Positions 39,741 to 47,372 of a stretch of DNA of 64,000 nt are shown piece by piece. The notes beneath the pieces are model-generated. The model did no database searches. It saw nothing but the letters and a program-made list of their open reading frames with translations, and had not been told where the DNA came from. The stretch covers positions 248,001-312,000 of the IMG/VR virus record IMGVR_UViG_3300050120_000152; one strand, written 5' to 3'. Within the stretch, counting starts at the first letter, position 1. Each line of letters starts with the position of its first letter. The translations under genes and the position numbers were made by a program.

Positions 39741-41885
39741 TTATCCTCTCACATGATCAAAGACTGTTAACGCTACCGGGTCAATAGATGGTATATGGAA
39801 TGGAATTACACATTCCATATTAACTTGTAATCCAGTAGTTATTAATGGTAATACAACTTCGAATGACGATGGTAAAGTAATATGTATATTTGCTAATGCT
39901 CCCAATGTTTGAATAGCATTTTCTGCATAGCTAACATAACCTTCGATTTCAGAAAGAATAGTAGATGATGGTATATTAAGTTCAGATAACACACCTATTG
40001 CCGTACTGATTGTACTTAATGCAGTATTGGCATAATAAGACAATGTATCTAACTGTAACCCATTTTCATTAAGTTTACCCAAAATACTACCTGCCCCACC
40101 CAATGTAGGCAATGACATATTTAATGATGTAGATATCATATGTATGTCATTAGTAGCTTGTAGCATTAATCCACCAGCGCTAAATGATAATGATGGTGCT
40201 AATGGATTACATGATATTGCGGATAATAAATTATTATCTCCCATAACCATATCGAATGATTCTCTGTTTTTAGCTACTGAAAATAAGTTACTTCCCGGAT
40301 CAGTAGGTGAGTTACTTGCTAATGTAGTATTTCCACCAGATTGTACGTCAAATGTTCCAGTGGTAGAAATGGTTACCGCAATATCAGTTACACCTATCTG
40401 ACTATTGGGCGATTTTATAATAACTTGTCCAGTTTCCGAATTACCGCCCACTGATTGTATGATAACATCACCACCCATAGATTTTAATACAAGATTTTCC
40501 CATGATGCTATATTCATGGTTCCTTCATAAGAATATATATTAACGTCAGATTTAGATGCCAACCAATATTCATCAATAGCAAACATGTTGGCTTTACCAC
40601 TAGCAGACATGTTATAATCTCCGGTTACTGATAAATTATAATGTCCATCATTTGTAATTATATCTATATCATTTTTAACTTGTGTGGAAAAATCACTTCC
40701 TACAGTTAAACAATAATTTCCACCTATTTCTGACATAGCATCACTCAAGCTCATTTGACGATATATCGTAGACAACAAATGTAAGTCATTTTGTGCTTGA
40801 ATTCTGACTTGACCAGATAATGGTGCTTCGGACATTTTTTCTAAACCATTATCAGTACCGGCGTAGATATACACGCCTTCTTTACCCTGAATTCGAACTG
40901 ATCCACCAGCATTTATATTAACATCCATATCAGAACTTAAAGATATTCTTCGGCTAGAGTATACGTCTACATTACCCGCAGAATCCATTTCCATCCATGC
41001 ATTACCCGTATTGGTTTTTACATAAATTCTATCATTAGTATCATCCATCAATATCATATGACCAGATGCAGAACGTAATTTAGTTCTACTATTAAAAATT
41101 CTATCATCCAAGGTAATAGAAGCAAATCCCGGCGAAGTCAATGCAATAACTTTAGATGCTTTGAACGATAATCCACCAAATCCACTCCAATCATACCCAT
41201 TTGATCCAACGATATCTTGATTGAATCCAAATTGTTGGGATTTGGCGATATCTTCTTGCATTTGATCTAAATATGACCCTTTATCGGGTGTTGGTGGTTG
41301 ATTAAGTGAACCATCTACTGCAGCAATAGAATAGTCTGCTATTCTAGCTTGCCATTCAGGTGAATTATTATTACCACCAAATGAGGCTTTAGCATTGTCA
41401 TATGCTGGCTGAATAGGTTTTCCCGCTGATGATAATGGGCCATCGGCAGACCCACCAGATGACCATTTAAACCGACCATTACCTAAAGTGTGGGTTTCTT
41501 GTTGATCATACATAGTACCAATCCAGTAGCGCCGACGAAGATCGCCGTCAATACATCCTACTAATACATTAGCCCCTACTTCGGGGATAGCCCAGAATCC
41601 ATAACTTACAGCACCAGTCGTAGTTTGACCATTACGCTCAAATGATGAGTTAGCAATAGTACCACCAAAGGGTGAGATATAAACTGCCCAAGGCAATTGT
41701 AATATTTTAGATGGATCATCGCCATGAGACGGACAAAATACTCTTAATCGACCTTGTTGTAAAGGATCATCCGTATCAACAACAATACCAGCGGTTAATG
41801 AAGTAGTAACATGAAAATAATCACCTTTATTATCGGTAGAATATCTTTTGTCTAAAATATCTAATAGTTCATCTTGGTTAATCAT
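39741..41885 (-). CDS. Baseplate central spike (gp5/VgrG-like: OB fold plus beta-helix), no lysozyme domain
   Basis: GIVVDTDDPLQQGRLRV, LPWA, FWAIPEVGANVLV, RSASGH.I.MDDT, beta-helix repeats. Confidence 0.85.
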   Translation of the reverse strand: MINQDELLDILDKRYSTDNKGDYFHVTTSLTAGIVVDTDDPLQQGRLRVFCPSHGDDPSKILQLPWAVYISPFGGTIANSSFERNGQTTTGAVSYGFWAIPEVGANVLVGCIDGDLRRRYWIGTMYDQQETHTLGNGRFKWSSGGSADGPLSSAGKPIQPAYDNAKASFGGNNNSPEWQARIADYSIAAVDGSLNQPPTPDKGSYLDQMQEDIAKSQQFGFNQDIVGSNGYDWSGFGGLSFKASKVIALTSPGFASITLDDRIFNSRTKLRSASGHMILMDDTNDRIYVKTNTGNAWMEMDSAGNVDVYSSRRISLSSDMDVNINAGGSVRIQGKEGVYIYAGTDNGLEKMSEAPLSGQVRIQAQNDLHLLSTIYRQMSLSDAMSEIGGNYCLTVGSDFSTQVKNDIDIITNDGHYNLSVTGDYNMSASGKANMFAIDEYWLASKSDVNIYSYEGTMNIASWENLVLKSMGGDVIIQSVGGNSETGQVIIKSPNSQIGVTDIAVTISTTGTFDVQSGGNTTLASNSPTDPGSNLFSVAKNRESFDMVMGDNNLLSAISCNPLAPSLSFSAGGLMLQATNDIHMISTSLNMSLPTLGGAGSILGKLNENGLQLDTLSYYANTALSTISTAIGVLSELNIPSSTILSEIEGYVSYAENAIQTLGALANIHITLPSSFEVVLPLITTGLQVNMECVIPFHIPSIDPVALTVFDHVRG

Positions 41886-44323
41886 GTTTTATCATCCGTG
41901 CGATATAATTGTAGAGATTGTGTAAAAAACGATCCAGTAATAACCGATTTTATTACTCCAAGATGATAATATCCTGTATAATAATATTGTAGCGGCATAT
42001 CTTTTGGTATAGTCAGGCCAATGCTATTAGATGGTTTAATATATACATCCAATTTTGCATACATTGGATAATATTCAGGGAATTTATAAAAATTTGGTGA
42101 GTCTGCATCTTCAGCAGATACCTTTATCGGATTTCTAAATAAATCTGATAATAAATTAGGATTTCCTATAATAGTAATATATAATTTTGATGTTTGTGTT
42201 AAGTTTGTTTTCACTAAATTATCTATTGATATTGGGCCATTAGGGCGCTCTAATCCAAAGTTTTTAGGATTAGCCATCCCTCTAACACCCGAATAAGCCG
42301 TATTAAAAAATCCTATATCAGGATTACGTTCTAACATGATCTGCTCTCTATTACCATAGATTGATAGATTATTGGTACTATTATTAGGTTGACTCATAAT
42401 ACCTAAATCAGTATCCGAAAATAATGACATTGATAATTTTATGATATCTCTATCTCTACCATTTTTTTGGTAAGTAAATTCTAATGGTTTAAAAAACCCC
42501 TCCCCAGTTCCCGGCCCAGAATCAGTAGTAGTGCTATTTAATGGTACAACATATTGTTTAATCGTTATATTAAATTCATATTTCGTGTCACACGTTTTGA
42601 CGCATGAAATATTACATTTATAGCTTTTTTGTAAGGATGAGGCAGAGATAGCATCATTACCCACTTGATTTGATAATTTCATTAAGTTATTAACTACTTT
42701 GGTAAGCATCTTACCGGGCTTAACTTGATATACCTTTATCCCTGATGATGTTTGAGATTGGTCAGGTTGTTCAAATGGCATATTTCTATTATCTATAATA
42801 TAGTCATTATAGATAGGGTCTAGATTTATATTATAATCTATAGGTAATATTCCATCAGATTTTTTTTGGTCATTGGGGATAAGCGAATCAACATAATTAT
42901 TATTTATAGATGCTAACCATTGTGATAATGTCGATGGTGGTGGTGATTTTAGAGCTTTCAGCGCTGCCTCAAGACCATTCATAACATCTTGAATAGTTTT
43001 CATTGTTTTATCACTATTTAATCTGCGGCTTCTATACCCATTTAACGCATCGTTTTTAGCCTTTATATCAATGTTTTGGTTTGATCCATGATCTAAATTA
43101 TTTTGTACTGGTGCTGGTTGATTCCCGGTAGGTGGTGGCAGACCACCGAATATAGCAGCTTCAGCAGCGCGACGATTTACTAAGCTTTGATTTACCTTAC
43201 CTCCAGAATATACATAATCATTAAATGCTTGTTGTGCACCATTATAATCACCTGAATTGAGTTTTGCTAATAATCCTTTATATCCATTAGCACCTACGTT
43301 ATAAGTTAAACTTACTAAGGCATCATATTTACCTTGGTCTAATAATACAGTAACCTTGGTACGTACAGCAGCTTGCGCCCATTGTAAATCTTCCAATAAA
43401 AATGCATCTGCTTGTGATTGATTAATCACATCACCCTCATGTACACCTTTTCGGTGACCATAACCAATAGCCCATGCATTTACATCCCAATAAGCCGTTA
43501 ATCGTAATCCTTCAAATTGTTTTATTAAATTTAAACCGGCATCACTTATCGAGAACGATGATGCTGGTTGACCATTATTAATAGTTACCGTTGGTGTAGG
43601 TGTTAATCCCGGTACTGGAGTTGGAGTTATAGTAACCGTAGGGGTAACGGTAATAGTTGCTGTTGGAGTAACGGTAGGTGTGGTTACATATGATTGGGCG
43701 CTTGCAATGTTAGCAGAGGTATTACTATCTTGATGAGTAATAGTCATCTGAAACATTTTTGAATAATTTGGTAATAATGAAAATGTATTATAATCTGCAA
43801 CATATAACATTGTATAAAAATTATTAATAGTATCGACATCATTATATGAATGTGTAAGATTATACATATGAAAAATTAGAGGTTTGATCGGTATAATTTC
43901 AGTTTTATCGTCATATGTAGTGCCAATGATATATGTTTTTAATGCAAATATAATATGTGTTTCTGATATATTTAATTTTGATGCGACCTGATCACGTAAA
44001 AAATTTTGAAAATATCCACCTACCGAATCGGTAATAGTTAATGCTCCCGTCATAGATGATGTTGATAAATCAAAAAATGAATGAAAGGAAAATTCATTTT
44101 CATGCGAATATATGATGAATGAATTATCGACAAACTCATTTACTACTACTATACCGGGTTGACCGCACCCAGTACCCACAAATTCTGTACCAGCTTTACC
44201 AATAGTATAATCTATTGTACTATTAACCGCATCAGAGGTAGTGGTAAATGCGACCAAAATATTTTTGATCACATAACTTCTATATTTCATTAACGGATTT
44301 TGTGTATCTGACGTATTAGGCAT
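41882..44323 (-). CDS. Baseplate hub (gp27-like) with inserted TP linker and GH24 lysozyme domain
   Basis: Upstream of gp5; C-term ITIIGNP, GYYHL..I.S.I.G..FTQ.L.L; internal GLNLIKQFEGLRL.AY.D..IGYGH...DALVSL.YNVG...L..RR.AEA..F. Confidence 0.75.
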   Translation of the reverse strand: MPNTSDTQNPLMKYRSYVIKNILVAFTTTSDAVNSTIDYTIGKAGTEFVGTGCGQPGIVVVNEFVDNSFIIYSHENEFSFHSFFDLSTSSMTGALTITDSVGGYFQNFLRDQVASKLNISETHIIFALKTYIIGTTYDDKTEIIPIKPLIFHMYNLTHSYNDVDTINNFYTMLYVADYNTFSLLPNYSKMFQMTITHQDSNTSANIASAQSYVTTPTVTPTATITVTPTVTITPTPVPGLTPTPTVTINNGQPASSFSISDAGLNLIKQFEGLRLTAYWDVNAWAIGYGHRKGVHEGDVINQSQADAFLLEDLQWAQAAVRTKVTVLLDQGKYDALVSLTYNVGANGYKGLLAKLNSGDYNGAQQAFNDYVYSGGKVNQSLVNRRAAEAAIFGGLPPPTGNQPAPVQNNLDHGSNQNIDIKAKNDALNGYRSRRLNSDKTMKTIQDVMNGLEAALKALKSPPPSTLSQWLASINNNYVDSLIPNDQKKSDGILPIDYNINLDPIYNDYIIDNRNMPFEQPDQSQTSSGIKVYQVKPGKMLTKVVNNLMKLSNQVGNDAISASSLQKSYKCNISCVKTCDTKYEFNITIKQYVVPLNSTTTDSGPGTGEGFFKPLEFTYQKNGRDRDIIKLSMSLFSDTDLGIMSQPNNSTNNLSIYGNREQIMLERNPDIGFFNTAYSGVRGMANPKNFGLERPNGPISIDNLVKTNLTQTSKLYITIIGNPNLLSDLFRNPIKVSAEDADSPNFYKFPEYYPMYAKLDVYIKPSNSIGLTIPKDMPLQYYYTGYYHLGVIKSVITGSFFTQSLQLYRTDDKT

Positions 44324-45525: not shown

Positions 45526-45562
45526 AGTTCTTTCCTCATTATACTAATTCATATATTACCAA

Positions 45563-45615
45563 TATTTATATCGTTTATAGATACAATTTTCTTGCATGTT
45601 TTAGAAATATAAATA
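45563..45615. promoter_or_regulatory. Back-to-back late promoters TATAAATA (- at 45563-45570, + at 45608-45615)
   Basis: Two exact T4 late boxes driving divergent baseplate operons. Confidence 0.75.
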
Positions 45616-45638
45616 GTTTAACAAATGAGATATACCAT

Positions 45639-46484
45639 ATGACATCAGAAGTCGATCTACAACATAATCCACTTATTCATAAAATGATTAAATCCAATGC
45701 TATTCCCGGCACTGTGTTTAGATTACCATCTAAAGGTATCCCTTATACTAATGGAGAGTTGGCTGATGAAGTGTTAGGTGGTGAAATTTTGATTTATCCT
45801 ATGTCAACATTAGATGAAATATATTTAAAATCTCCTGATATGCTTTTCCAAGGTACTGCAGTTGAAAAAACTCTAGTTAGATGTTGCCCACAGATTATTA
45901 AACCTTTAGAGCTATTGGCTAAGGATGTAGATTATATCCTTACTTGTATGAGACAAGTATCTTATGGAAATATTTTAACTGTTCCATACGAATGTAATTG
46001 TCCAAAAGCTAAACCAATTGACCTACAAGTCCCTGTATCAGACTTTTTATCTAAAACTAAGACCATATCCGAAAAATCTTTAAAACAGCTTACCTTCACT
46101 CTTGATAGTTTTTTGATAAAGACTAAGTATGTGCGATTCGGACAAATGATTAAATTAAATCAAGAAAATCTTACTGAGGGTGATGAAGATACTCCAGATA
46201 ATATTTTTGATACGTTTATTAAAAATCTAGCAGCAAATATCGAATCCATTGATGCTATAGAAGATAATAATATTATTGTAGATTTCTTGAAAGCCCAGCA
46301 ACGGTCTTTCCAAATGTCTCTTCTTAAGAATATTCAAGATATCAATAATTGGGGGGTAAATTTTGAATATAAATTTACCTGTAAATATTGTGATAAAGTT
46401 AAAACGACCGCGATTGCATTGAATCCTGTAAGTTTTTTTACGGAACCCTCAAATCAGGAACCGGAGAGCAAAAGCGACGATTAA
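45639..46484 (+). CDS. Baseplate hub assembly protein (gp26-like)
   Basis: RLPSKG..Y, IYPMST.DE..L, D.DYIL...R.VSYG, C.C and CKYC, ends near SFF; start set to ATG 45639 downstream of late promoter. Confidence 0.8.
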   Translation: MTSEVDLQHNPLIHKMIKSNAIPGTVFRLPSKGIPYTNGELADEVLGGEILIYPMSTLDEIYLKSPDMLFQGTAVEKTLVRCCPQIIKPLELLAKDVDYILTCMRQVSYGNILTVPYECNCPKAKPIDLQVPVSDFLSKTKTISEKSLKQLTFTLDSFLIKTKYVRFGQMIKLNQENLTEGDEDTPDNIFDTFIKNLAANIESIDAIEDNNIIVDFLKAQQRSFQMSLLKNIQDINNWGVNFEYKFTCKYCDKVKTTAIALNPVSFFTEPSNQEPESKSDD

Positions 46485-46675
46485 AAAATGATCTTGAGGG
46501 TCAAAGTAGAAAATTATATAAATCAGGTGTAGAAATAATGTACTTTATGCGTGGCGCACTTAGTCGTGAAAGCATGTTGGATTTAACTTCATGGGAAAAA
46601 GATATATTGTCCGAATTCCTTAATGAGCGCATAGAAATTGAGATGCAAAAAAAGAATACCCCACCAATTTATTAA
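46439..46675 (+). CDS. gp51-like hub-assembly ORF, probably reached by -1 frameshift from the gp26-like gene (alternative ATG 46538)
   Basis: -1 frame: YGTLKSGTGEQKRRLKNDLEGQSRKLYKSGVEIMYFMRGALSRESMLDLTSWEKDILSEFLNERIEIEMQKKNTPPIY; not in ORF track. Confidence 0.6.
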   Translation, partial: YGTLKSGTGEQKRRLKNDLEGQSRKLYKSGVEIMYFMRGALSRESMLDLTSWEKDILSEFLNERIEIEMQKKNTPPIY

Positions 46676-46676
46676 T

Positions 46677-47372
46677 ATGAATATAGTAGCTATTGATCCA
46701 TCCCTAACCTGTTCAGCCTTAGTTGTAAATGATAAAAAATTTATTTACGCTAAAGAAGATTTGGGAATATCTGAAAAAACACAAAAAATTAAGAAATGGT
46801 TTGAGTTATGTGCACCATTCATTACCTATCGTTGGATAAATTATACAAAAAATATTATTCATTCAGAATCTGAAATATCTAAGTTAATGGAATATGATGT
46901 TATTACGGATAACATCATAAAAGATATATTATCTAATATTAACAAAGATGAAAAGACGATCATCGGAATTGAAGGATATAGTTATTCATCTGCAGCAGGC
47001 CCATTAATTGATTTAGTTACTTTTAGTACATTATTACGAAATAAATTATATAAACAAGTATCAACAAATATAAAAGTATTTCAGCCAGCATCATTAAAAT
47101 TGGAGGCGGCAAAACTAACTTATCCAGTAATAAGAAAGGGTGTGAAAGTCATAAAATTAGAATATAGAAATAATCAAGGTGTTTCTGGTGGTAAATTTAA
47201 AAAACCGGAAATGTTAATGGCATTGACTGATAATACTACTTTAATATGTCCATGGGTTGAGTTTTTAAGAGTTCATCAACAACTCATTATGGAACTGAAT
47301 ACGGTTCCTAAACCAATGGAAGATGTTAATGATGCCAAATTACTATATGAAATCCTAAAGAACCATAAATAA
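46677..47372 (+). CDS. RuvC-like Holliday junction resolvase
   Basis: IVAIDPSLTCSA, IGIEGYSY, P.SLK, EDVNDA; start set to ATG 46677. Confidence 0.75.
   Translation: MNIVAIDPSLTCSALVVNDKKFIYAKEDLGISEKTQKIKKWFELCAPFITYRWINYTKNIIHSESEISKLMEYDVITDNIIKDILSNINKDEKTIIGIEGYSYSSAAGPLIDLVTFSTLLRNKLYKQVSTNIKVFQPASLKLEAAKLTYPVIRKGVKVIKLEYRNNQGVSGGKFKKPEMLMALTDNTTLICPWVEFLRVHQQLIMELNTVPKPMEDVNDAKLLYEILKNHK

What the first reader, a model, noticed from the sequence alone, without database searches (positions are those of the whole stretch)
46400..46675. Probable programmed -1 frameshift joining gp26-like and gp51-like ORFs
The gp26-like gene has an in-frame slippery heptamer T TTT TTT (46433-46439, Ser-Phe-Phe) 14 codons before its stop. 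The -1 frame is closed at 46400, open across the heptamer for 78 codons to 46675, fills the gap to the RuvC-like start, and encodes a gp51-like helix (MYFMRG...LTSWEK). Products would be 281 and about 345 aa. This parallels lambda gpG/gpGT and P2 gpE/E+E' tail chaperones, a mechanism not classically assigned to T4-type hub chaperones.
Basis: partly seen in the sequence, partly recalled or inferred. Interest (0 to 1): 0.72.

Follow-up and report, generated by a model that had tools for sequence, protein, structure and literature searches.

The report
Frameshift makes short and long hub proteins
A giant phage from peat makes two versions of its tail-baseplate hub assembly protein from one gene by letting some ribosomes slip back one base on a run of Ts, doing with one gene what phage T4 does with two (genes 26 and 51).

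Summary
The gp26-like gene (45639-46484, Pfam PF12322) carries T TTT TTT at 46433-46439 in X XXY YYZ register. The -1 frame is closed at 46400 and open for 78 codons to 46675.

The site is far beyond chance. Of 100 non-identical relatives, all jumbo myophages, 95 keep T TTT TTY in register and 4 have G TTT TTT. All 93 with a complete downstream region have a 70-82 codon -1 ORF starting exactly at the slip site.

Positions 1-6 of the heptamer are fixed against codon usage, while position 7 is free (T or C). In 48 of 93 loci the -1 frame has no start codon near the slip site. In close relatives the overlap evolves synonymously in the -1 frame. A stem starts 5-6 nt downstream and co-varies.

Some phages encode the same long protein in a single frame, directly behind a second, short paralogue. 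These long forms, and T4 gp51, align collinearly with the predicted trans-frame product, and T4 gp26 ends at the junction. The window's genome has only one PF12322 gene.

Best explanation: programmed -1 ribosomal frameshifting gives a 281-aa gp26-like protein and a 345-aa gp51-like protein. I found it in no paper searched, and none of the 12 GenBank records examined annotates it.

The parts
45608..45615 (+). TATAAATA, a T4-late-promoter-like octamer 24 nt upstream of the hub ATG. A mirror copy on the minus strand at 45563-45570 faces the divergent 285-aa gene.
   Evidence: 10 copies in the window against 20.8 expected (depleted), two of them in this 113-nt divergent intergenic region. The promoter role is inferred from the T4 late-promoter consensus (own knowledge), not tested.
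45639..46484 (+). Zero-frame ORF, 281 aa: the short (gp26-like) baseplate hub assembly protein. The folded domain ends at about residue 265. Residues 266-281 (FF plus the 14-codon tail) are predicted disordered.
   Evidence: PF12322, E 2e-8, residues 71-267 on profile positions 41-218 of 219. (phrog_150); 65 homologues, all ending NPxxFF plus 0-15 aa. AF2 pLDDT 85.5, below 50 for residues 266-281.
46433..46439 (+). Slippery heptamer T TTT TTT (X XXY YYZ; Ser265-Phe266-Phe267).
   Evidence: 95 of 100 unique relatives have T TTT TTY in register; first Phe codon TTT in 99/100 (0.54 elsewhere in the gene), preceding codon NNT in 95/100 (0.47 expected), second Phe TTT 57: TTC 43.
46445..46501 (+). 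Predicted stimulatory stem-loop, 5 nt after the heptamer. The core is CCCUCAA (46446-46452) paired with UUGAGGG (46494-46500), enclosing about 40 nt.
   Evidence: MFE -15.1 kcal/mol, but z only -1.26 for the window alone; the same stem at +4 to +7 in 20 of 23 long-tail relatives, with compensatory variants CCAUCAA/UUGAUGG and CCCUCCGAUC/GGUUGGAGGG. Native arms average -16.8 against -13.0 kcal/mol for swapped partners, p 6e-5.
46482..46484 (+). Zero-frame stop TAA, ending the short product.
   Evidence: Tail length varies from 1 to 14 codons across the family.
46439..46675 (+). The -1 frame extension: 78 codons plus TAA, a three-helix domain (gp51-C-terminus-like). Together with 45639-46439 it gives the 345-aa long product.
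   Evidence: tblastn hits that start inside the hub genes of XacN1, Xoo-sp13, RAS14 and CM1; the alignment is essentially ungapped from residue 1; 605 homologues; pLDDT 89.5, helices 9-37, 43-47 and 51-70; similarity to gp51.
46538..46540 (+). First ATG of the -1 frame (the start of the 45-aa ORF that gene callers would find), preceded by AGGTG at 46525-46529. It is a possible minor internal start, but its product would lack helix 1.
   Evidence: Gene callers called no ORF here in the close relatives L147 and L149.

Best explanation
The gene at 45639 encodes a PF12322 (T4 gp26/gp51-family) baseplate hub assembly protein and is decoded in two ways.

Most ribosomes read straight through and stop at 46484. 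This gives a 281-aa short form, whose last 16 residues are an unstructured tail.

A minority pause with tRNA-Phe in the P and A sites on U UUU UUU (46433-46439), helped by a stem-loop that starts 5 nt downstream. Both tRNAs re-pair one base back, and translation continues in the -1 frame to 46675. This gives a 345-aa long form: the same hub domain (residues 1-267) followed by a 78-residue helical domain.

The two products correspond to T4 gp26 (short) and gp51 (long; in T4 genetics the 'catalytic' hub assembly factor). The frameshift therefore fixes a short:long ratio from a single gene, as lambda does with gpG/gpGT.

Shown here:
- the anatomy of the site;
- family-wide conservation of the site, the register and the -1 ORF;
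- -1-frame selection;
- collinearity with single-frame long forms;
- a single PF12322 gene in this genome.

Inferred:
- that slippage is ribosomal;
- its efficiency, presumed low because U UUU UUU is a modest shifter in E. coli (PMC5009743);
- the role of the stem;
- the functions of the two products, which are extrapolated from T4 genetics.
For: (a) Register-specific conservation. 95 of 100 unique loci have T TTT TTY and 4 have G TTT TTT. Heptamer positions 1-6 are fixed against codon usage while position 7 follows normal TTT/TTC usage. That is the signature of tandem tRNA slippage, not of a long homopolymer.

(b) The -1 ORF is 70-82 codons from the slip site in 93 of 93 loci and is closed 2-40 codons upstream. 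The +1 frame has a median of 8 codons.

(c) The protein alignment of the -1 product is essentially ungapped and conserved from residue 4 (L-K/R-S-G) onward.

(d) 48 of 93 loci have no ATG, GTG or TTG in the -1 frame up to codon +7, and the heptamer is kept even where an ATG exists. The small ORF is unannotated in RsoM2USA, PA5oct, Cassandra and RaK2.

(e) In relatives with 73-86% hub identity, codon changes in the overlap are synonymous: non-synonymous 3:2, 3:2 and 4:1 in the -1 frame, against 1:4, 0:6 and 0:5 in the zero frame.

(f) Single-frame proteins of 320-346 aa have PF12322 followed by this domain. Their junction F-R-x-K-L...PEEI matches the trans-frame junction FF|R-x-x-L-L...PEEI of 121Q, RaK2 and Atu_ph07.

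(g) In L154 and L155 that long gene directly follows a short PF12322 gene. T4 likewise has two copies, gp26 and gp51. The window genome, XacN1, GAP32, PA5oct and Atu_ph07 each have one.

(h) There is a downstream stem at +4 to +7 with compensatory changes.

(i) The AF2 model of the -1 domain is confident, and its helix 1 is encoded upstream of ATG 46538.
Against: - There is no protein, ribosome-profiling or reporter evidence for any member.
- The only runs holding this sequence are DNA and are kept as contigs.
- For the window alone, the stem's stability is not unusual (z -1.26).
- The arms of the stem are also constrained by two reading frames, and the native-versus-swapped test is not phylogenetically independent.
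- U UUU UUU is a relatively weak shift site in E. coli (PMC5009743), and the host here is unknown.
- In about a quarter of relatives an ATG (often ATGA overlapping the zero-frame stop) could start the small ORF on its own.
- One relative (L011) has no slippery heptamer but keeps the -1 ORF.
- An AGGTG lies 8 nt before ATG 46538, so a 45-aa product may also be made.
Confidence: 0.8

Rival explanations
1. The fusion is made, but by transcriptional slippage. RNA polymerase adds one extra U on the T7 run, and ordinary translation of that mRNA gives the same 345-aa protein.
For: T7 to T9 runs (the window; RsoM2USA has T9) are known slippage-prone templates, and UUUUUUU is avoided in E. coli genes partly for that reason (PMC4066793). 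The protein product would be identical, so nothing in the coding analysis separates the two mechanisms.
Against: - 43 of 100 relatives have only six Ts (T TTT TTC). The seventh position follows ordinary Phe codon usage instead of being selected for T.
- Strict X XXY YYZ register and a stem at the canonical 5-7 nt spacing are features of ribosomal frameshifting.
- The contigs of the DNA run show a clean T7, but no RNA data exist.
Confidence: 0.1
2. There are two separate genes. The small ORF is translated on its own, from ATG 46538 (45 aa) in the window and from overlapping ATGA or other starts in relatives, and the T-run is only the codons for a conserved Phe-Phe.
For: Phe-Phe is invariant at the protein level. 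23 of 93 loci have an ATG within reach and 22 more have GTG or TTG. Gene callers and GenBank annotate separate small ORFs in XacN1, Xoo-sp13, RAS14, GAP32 and 121Q. AGGTG precedes ATG 46538.
Against: - It does not explain why the first Phe is TTT in 99/100 loci and the preceding wobble base is T in 95/100, when the same genes use TTC 46% of the time.
- It does not explain why the -1 ORF always opens before, and is conserved from, the slip site.
- It does not explain why 48 of 93 loci lack any start codon there.
- It does not explain why overlap substitutions are synonymous in the -1 frame.
- A 45-aa product lacks helix 1 of the domain.
- Single-frame fusions exist in other phages.
Confidence: 0.07
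3. It is an artefact or decay: a homopolymer sequencing error (the true run being T8, giving a single 345-aa ORF), or a recently broken gene.
For: Homopolymer runs are error-prone, and one extra T would fuse the frames.
Against: - The same split architecture occurs in 100 non-identical sequences from isolates and metagenomes made on different platforms.
- An independent assembly at depth 135 agrees.
- All 65 database homologues stop shortly after FF, and none is fused at a T-run.
Confidence: 0.01

Closest known systems
Phage T4 gene 26 (gp26, 208 aa) and gene 51 (gp51, 249 aa): baseplate hub subunit and hub assembly catalyst
   Same: - It is the same protein family: both T4 proteins and the window protein match PF12322.
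- gp26 ends 3 residues after its FF, at the position of the slip site.
- gp51 continues with an extension (FKLL-NPDEI...MIPAER...) that aligns with the -1 domain.
- So the short/long pair is the same.
   Different: - T4 uses two divergently transcribed paralogous genes and no recoding. Its FF is TTC TTT, and gene 25 starts at the stop of gene 26.
- The window phage has one gene and a frameshift.
- The gp51 extension is about 30 residues shorter, lacking most of helix 1.
- The newer Pfam model of gp51's C-terminus (PF28602) is not on record for the 74-aa small ORFs of two relatives.
Lambda gpG/gpGT, and P2 gpE/gpE+E', tail assembly chaperones made by -1 frameshifting
   Same: A -1 slip on a heptamer near the 3' end of a tail-morphogenesis gene yields an abundant short form and a rarer C-terminally extended form from one gene. 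In lambda the 30:1 ratio is essential and neither product is in the virion (PMC5009743).
   Different: - No sequence or fold similarity was detected: no Pfam or PHROG chaperone family, and no PDB match at E <= 0.001.
- The gene is not between the tail tube and tape-measure genes. It is divergent from baseplate genes and followed by a resolvase.
- The slip site is U UUU UUY, not lambda's G GGA AAG (own knowledge).
- Binding to a tape measure is untested.
Tandem short-plus-long PF12322 gene pairs in uncultured phages (L154, L155; long forms P0303, P0227)
   Same: The long form has the hub domain plus the same helical extension in one frame (E 1e-13 to 1e-17 to the -1 domain profile). The short form ends a few residues after the xFF/xFL motif.
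   Different: There are two genes and no frameshift is needed. The two hub domains have diverged from each other.
E. coli dnaX tau/gamma
   Same: This is the bacterial model of a -1 frameshift on X XXY YYZ with a downstream stem-loop that gives two forms of one protein in a set ratio (PMC5009743).
   Different: In dnaX the frameshift product is the shorter one, the site is A AAA AAG, and there is an upstream SD-like enhancer. No SD-like element was seen upstream of 46433.

Membership tests
Programmed -1 ribosomal frameshift site | Slippery heptamer X XXY YYZ in the zero-frame register | tested here: met
   T TTT TTT at 46433-46439 with the first T at codon position 3. It is conserved in register in 95 of 100 relatives, with position 7 free.
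Programmed -1 ribosomal frameshift site | A -1 ORF that overlaps the site, is closed shortly upstream, and is conserved as protein from the site onward | tested here: met
   It is closed at 46400 and open for 78 codons. The ORF is 70-82 codons in 93 of 93 loci. Residues are conserved from position 4. There is a -1-frame synonymous bias in the overlap.
Programmed -1 ribosomal frameshift site | Stimulatory RNA structure 5-9 nt downstream | tested here: inconclusive
   A stem lies at 46445-46501, starting 5 nt after the site. The clade shows compensatory variants, and native arms beat swapped arms (p 6e-5). However, the window's own z-score is -1.26, the arms are doubly coding, and the test is not corrected for phylogeny.
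Programmed -1 ribosomal frameshift site | Trans-frame protein actually made | not testable with these tools
   No RNA or proteome data exist for this uncultured phage. The public runs are DNA kept as contigs. The PA5oct omics paper does not mention a frameshift.
Pfam PF12322 T4_baseplate (gp26/gp51 family) | Match to the family model above its gathering score | tested here: met
   34.6 bits against a cut-off of 24.5, E 2e-8, covering profile positions 41-218 of 219. The fold matches BFVD 'baseplate hub (assembly) protein' models at E down to 6e-18.
gp51-type long form | C-terminal extension homologous to that of gp51 | tested here: inconclusive
   The direct profile-profile match has probability 76%, E 2.3e-5, over 36 columns at the very C-terminus of gp51. 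Single-sequence gp51 gave nothing. Indirectly, natural long forms link the two: E 1e-13 to 1e-17 to the -1 domain, and 85.5% with collinearity to gp51. This is supportive, but below the usual 95% level.
Lambda gpG/gpGT-type tail assembly chaperones | Sequence or fold similarity to known chaperone families | tested here: not met
   No Pfam or PHROG chaperone family was hit. There is no PDB sequence match and no Foldseek PDB match at E <= 0.001.
Lambda gpG/gpGT-type tail assembly chaperones | Gene lies between the tail tube gene and the tape-measure gene | tested here: not met
   The neighbours are a divergent 285-aa structural protein, a gp53-like protein and a gp5-like protein upstream, and a RuvC-like resolvase downstream. 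In Rak2-like relatives the divergent neighbour is annotated as tape-measure-like.
Lambda gpG/gpGT-type tail assembly chaperones | Short and long forms from a -1 frameshift near the 3' end | tested here: met
   See the frameshift rows above. This shows that it works like G/GT, not that it belongs to that family.
Lambda gpG/gpGT-type tail assembly chaperones | Binds the tape measure protein and is absent from virions | not testable with these tools
   No binding data exist. In the PA5oct record the neighbouring structural protein carries an 'ESI-MS/MS' note and the hub protein does not, which is only a weak hint.

The most novel reading that the evidence does not exclude
The PF12322 short/long pair (T4 gp26/gp51) is the T4-type functional counterpart of the lambda G/GT tail assembly chaperones. 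On this reading, the shared hub domain coats the tape measure or hub core, and the helical extension, supplied in small amounts, recruits the next component. The ratio is set by frameshifting in a large, ancient clade of jumbo phages (Rak2-like, PA5oct-like, XacN1-like, Atu_ph07 and many uncultured ones) and by gene duplication in T4. If so, a recoding-controlled two-form chaperone would be a general rule of long-tail assembly, reached independently with an unrelated fold.
Probability: 0.3. Interest if true: 0.8.

Novelty: new member of a known kind. Interest (0 to 1): 0.62.

Why it matters
Programmed -1 frameshifting in tail genes is a textbook feature of lambda-like and P2-like phages, but it has not been assigned to the T4-type hub assembly proteins. 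Three consequences follow.

- **Annotation.** The long protein is missing from the annotation of a whole clade of jumbo phages. None of the 12 GenBank records examined shows a joined CDS, and several do not call the small ORF at all.
- **Biology of T4.** It explains why T4 has two paralogues, gp26 and gp51. They are the short and long forms of one ancestral two-product gene, or the reverse.
- **An old question.** What gp26 and gp51 actually do in hub assembly has been unclear since the 1970s, and no structure exists. The finding recasts it as a question about a stoichiometric short:long pair. That question can be tested genetically in cultured relatives by making short-only and long-only mutants.

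Tried and rejected
- Pfam and PHROGs on the 90-aa -1 ORF gave no family.
- blastn of the region against phage records found no close relative, only a 77-nt patch in Xoo-sp13.
- hhalign of the first 18-sequence -1 alignment against the single T4 gp51 sequence gave probability 0.8%. A gp51 family profile was needed.
- The newer Pfam family PF28602 (gp51 C-terminus, seen in precomputed tables) is absent from the local Pfam copy. It is also not recorded for the 74-aa small ORFs.
- PDB sequence searches with the hub, gp51 and -1 domain profiles gave nothing credible. Foldseek against the PDB gave nothing at E <= 0.001, so no link to known tail chaperone folds could be made.
- Column-wise covariation counting (count of structure pairs) was not used. 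The 3' arm of the stem sits one nucleotide apart between clades (Leu CTT against TTG), so a gap-free column structure would misreport pairs. I compared duplex energies of native against swapped arms instead.
- Read-level inspection of the T-run was impossible, because both runs are kept as contigs only.
- The idea that T4 itself hides the same frameshift was rejected. Its FF is TTC TTT, and gene 25 begins at gene 26's stop.
- A literature search with five term sets found no report of this frameshift.
Full report
**What is in the sequence.**
The ORF list and the raw sequence show a 281-codon gene from ATG 45639 to TAA 46482-46484. Seven Ts lie at 46433-46439. The zero-frame codons there are AGT TTT TTT (Ser265, Phe266, Phe267), so the run sits in X XXY YYZ register, and 14 codons follow before the stop.

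The -1 frame has a TAA at 46400-46402 and is then open to TAA 46673-46675. The next gene starts at 46677. From the last T of the run the -1 frame reads 78 codons (YGTLKSG...MYFMRGALS...LTSWEK...PPIY). It contains no ATG, GTG or TTG before ATG 46538.

**Identity of the gene and the phage.**
- The 281-aa protein matches Pfam PF12322 (T4_baseplate) above its gathering score. The match ends at profile position 218 of 219 on residue 267, which is the second Phe of the slip site. It also matches phrog_150, baseplate hub.
- The neighbours are a divergent 285-aa structural protein, a gp53-like protein and an 813-aa gp5-like lysozyme hub protein. Downstream lies a RuvC-like resolvase.
- The window lies in a complete 340,344-bp virus record with direct terminal repeats. 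The public runs that hold it are peat metagenomes.
- Relatives of the hub protein in the phage collection are all jumbo myophages: XacN1, Xoo-sp13, RAS14, RsoM2USA, the PA5oct group, Atu_ph07 and the Rak2-like group (GAP32, CBB, 121Q, PBECO4, RaK2 and others).

**The -1 ORF is a conserved protein that starts at the slip site.**
- tblastn with the -1 ORF found XacN1, Xoo-sp13, RAS14 and CM1. The alignments begin inside the annotated hub gene.
- Reading those loci showed the same T7 run at the same N-P-x-x-F-F, in the same register, with the -1 frame open from there.
- More distant phages (GAP32, PA5oct, Atu_ph07, 121Q, RaK2, RsoM2USA) have T TTT TTC, or a T9 run, at the same place, again with an open, homologous -1 ORF.
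- Scans of viral and metagenome contigs added 122 loci.

Among the 139 loci that contain the 3' end of the hub gene, 100 are non-identical:

| Property | Result |
|---|---|
| T TTT TTY in register | 95 of 100 |
| G TTT TTT | 4 of 100 |
| No slippery site (L011) | 1 of 100 |
| -1 ORF from the slip site, where the downstream sequence is complete | 70-82 codons in 93 of 93 |
| -1 frame closed upstream | 2-40 codons before the site |
| +1 frame | median 8 codons |
| Zero-frame tail after FF | 1 to 14 codons |

All 65 database homologues of the hub protein end NPxxFF plus 0-15 residues.

**Synonymous-site evidence.**

| Position in the site | Observed at the site | Usage elsewhere in the same genes |
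|---|---|---|
| First Phe codon | TTT in 99/100 | TTT 0.54 of Phe codons |
| Third base of the preceding codon | T in 95/100 | 0.47 |
| Second Phe codon | TTT 57, TTC 43 | ordinary usage |

Codon usage predicts 26.7 loci with T TTT, and 95 were observed. Among 29 distant representatives, 27 have it, with joint P about 1e-16. Positions 1-6 of the heptamer are therefore constrained and position 7 is not. That is what tandem tRNA slippage requires, and it is not what selection for a long homopolymer would give.

**Evidence that the extension is not started independently.**
[quoted passage not shown] Another 22 have only GTG or TTG, and 23 have an ATG, often ATGA overlapping the zero-frame stop. 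The heptamer is intact in all 23 loci that have an ATG.
- Gene callers give the homologous small ORFs ragged starts, at profile positions 1, 3, 15, 19, 26 and 33. GenBank does not annotate the ORF at all in RsoM2USA, PA5oct, Cassandra and RaK2.
- In three close relatives (73-86% hub identity; L147, L148, L149) no start codon precedes the equivalent of ATG 46538. No small ORF was called in L147 or L149. L148's contig ends about 110 nt after the hub stop, and the callers list only a 20-aa end fragment there.
- In these relatives, codon changes between the slip site and the zero-frame stop are mostly synonymous in the -1 frame (3:2, 3:2, 4:1) and non-synonymous in the zero frame (1:4, 0:6, 0:5).
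- Across the family, codon-position entropy shows a coding pattern (second position lowest, third highest) in the stretch between the zero-frame stop and ATG 46538: 1.64, 1.15, 1.81.
- The AlphaFold model of the 78-residue extension is confident (pLDDT 89.5), with helices at 9-37, 43-47 and 51-70. A product starting at ATG 46538 (residue 34) would lack helix 1.
- The hub model (pLDDT 85.5) is ordered to about residue 265. The zero-frame tail is disordered.

**RNA structure.**
In the window a stem pairs 46445-46456 with 46489-46501, starting 5 nt after the heptamer. Its core is CCCUCAA (46446-46452) with UUGAGGG (46494-46500). The MFE is -15.1 kcal/mol, but the z-score is only -1.26.

In the clade with long zero-frame tails the same stem starts at +4 to +7 in 20 of 23 sequences. 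Variants keep pairing: CCAUCAA/UUGAUGG in the XacN1 group and CCCUCCGAUC/GGUUGGAGGG in L125. Native arm pairs are more stable than arms swapped between sequences (-16.8 against -13.0 kcal/mol, p 6e-5) or shuffled arms (-8.8).

The short-tail clade shows a weaker effect (p 0.001). There the zero-frame stop lies 1-2 codons after the site. RsoM2USA has a perfect 10-bp hairpin 14 nt after its T9 run. I treat the stem as probable but not proven, because the arms are doubly coding and the sequences are related.

**Rosetta-stone proteins and T4.**
- A profile of the -1 domain searched against 1.84 billion proteins found 605 hits. Seven of them are proteins of 320-346 aa with the domain at their C-terminus.
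- These seven are PF12322 proteins, that is, the long form encoded in one frame.
- In the two contigs recovered, the long gene directly follows a second, short PF12322 gene that ends a few residues after its xFF/xFL motif.
- T4 has the same arrangement in another layout. gp26 (208 aa) and gp51 (249 aa) both match PF12322 end to end, and gp51 has a 48-residue extension.
- A joint alignment shows the conceptual trans-frame products, the natural long forms and the gp51 family running collinearly through the junction (FF|RxxLLxxxPEEI, F-RNKL...PEEI, F-KLL-NPDEI) to a shared C-terminal motif (S/P-x-ER-x-hydrophobic). T4 gp26 stops at the junction.
- Profile-profile scores: -1 domain against the gp51 family, 76%, E 2.3e-5. 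Natural long forms against the gp51 family, 85.5%, E 5.7e-6, over 234 columns from the N- to the C-terminus.
- The window genome, XacN1, GAP32, PA5oct and Atu_ph07 each contain one PF12322 gene. T4 contains two.

**Interpretation.**
The simplest account is a programmed -1 ribosomal frameshift. It yields a 281-aa short form (gp26-like) and a 345-aa long form (gp51-like) from one gene. T4 and some uncultured phages obtain the same pair from two paralogous genes.

The frameshift efficiency is unknown. U UUU UUU is a modest shifter in E. coli compared with A AAA AAG (PMC5009743). That would fit a minor long form, and T4 gp51 is described as acting catalytically (record note; own knowledge of T4 genetics).

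The strategy parallels lambda gpG/gpGT, whose 30:1 ratio is essential (PMC5009743). I found no sequence or fold relation to those chaperones, and the gene context differs. The claim is therefore 'works like', not 'is a member of'.

**Rivals.**
- *Transcriptional slippage* would give the same protein and cannot be excluded for the T7-T9 members. It fits poorly with the 43% of relatives that have only six Ts, with the free seventh position, and with the spaced stem.
- *Independent translation of the small ORF* is possible in the quarter of relatives that have an ATG, and a 45-aa product from ATG 46538 (preceded by AGGTG) may exist. It leaves the heptamer conservation, the missing start codons, the -1-frame selection in the overlap and the single-frame fusions unexplained.
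- *Sequencing error* is excluded by 100 independent sequences and by an independent assembly at depth 135.

**Novelty.**
None of the 12 GenBank records inspected carries a joined CDS here. Full-text searches found no report. The large recoding review contains no instance of the word 'baseplate' in the 300,000 characters held.

The mechanism is classical. What is new is the gene family, the breadth of the clade, and the link to the gp26/gp51 pair. I rate it a new member of a known kind, with moderate-to-high interest.

Noticed in passing
window 45526-45638 (TATAAATA at 45608-45615 on the + strand and 45563-45570 on the - strand): The divergent intergenic region between the 285-aa gene and the hub gene holds two copies of the T4 late-promoter consensus TATAAATA, one facing each gene. 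The octamer is depleted in the window as a whole (10 found, 20.8 expected).
   Followed up: partly
window 46677-47372; L019 3285-3774, L022 3311-3759, L023 3151-3645: In the window and the XacN1-like phages, a RuvC-like resolvase gene follows the hub/extension gene. In Rak2-like phages (GAP32, 121Q, RaK2) an endonuclease VII gene occupies that side instead. Two unrelated Holliday-junction resolvases therefore sit at the same locus.
   Followed up: no
L011 3282-3301 (IMGVR_UViG_3300002055_000003): This is the only relative without a slippery heptamer (GCA CTC TTT TCC TAA), yet it keeps an intact, conserved 76-codon -1 ORF. How the extension is expressed there is unexplained.
   Followed up: partly
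L043, L065, L068, L096 (ends of the hub genes): Four relatives have NNG TTT TTT ACN TAR: six Ts with a G at heptamer position 1, and a stop one codon later. The P-site tRNA would re-pair with a first-position mismatch.
   Followed up: partly
L018 2268-2330 (Ralstonia phage RsoM2USA): The slip site is a T9 run. A perfect 10-bp hairpin (CTCGTGATTA-tcatc-TAATCACGAG) follows 14 nt later. About 1.4 kb after the hub gene carries no annotation in the record.
   Followed up: partly
L154 820-2744, L155 1959-3790: Two uncultured phages carry tandem PF12322 genes, short then long. The short gene of L154 still ends with TCT TTT TTC AAT GAC TAA, possibly a relic of a slip site.
   Followed up: partly
L019 2480-3285, L022 2474-3311 (GAP32, 121Q): An unannotated gap of about 800 nt lies between the small ORF and the endonuclease VII gene in Rak2-like phages.
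   Followed up: no
window 41882-44323, minus strand: An 813-aa gp5-like hub protein has a lysozyme domain and a Thr/Pro/Val-rich repeat linker (TTPTVTPTATITVTPTVTITPTPVPGLTPTPTV).
   Followed up: no
L023 1-1855 (RaK2 ORF088) and its equivalents in L019, L020, L022: In Rak2-like and PA5oct-like phages, the gene divergent from the hub gene is a large virion structural protein. In RaK2 it is annotated as similar to a tail tape measure protein, which bears on the chaperone analogy.
   Followed up: no
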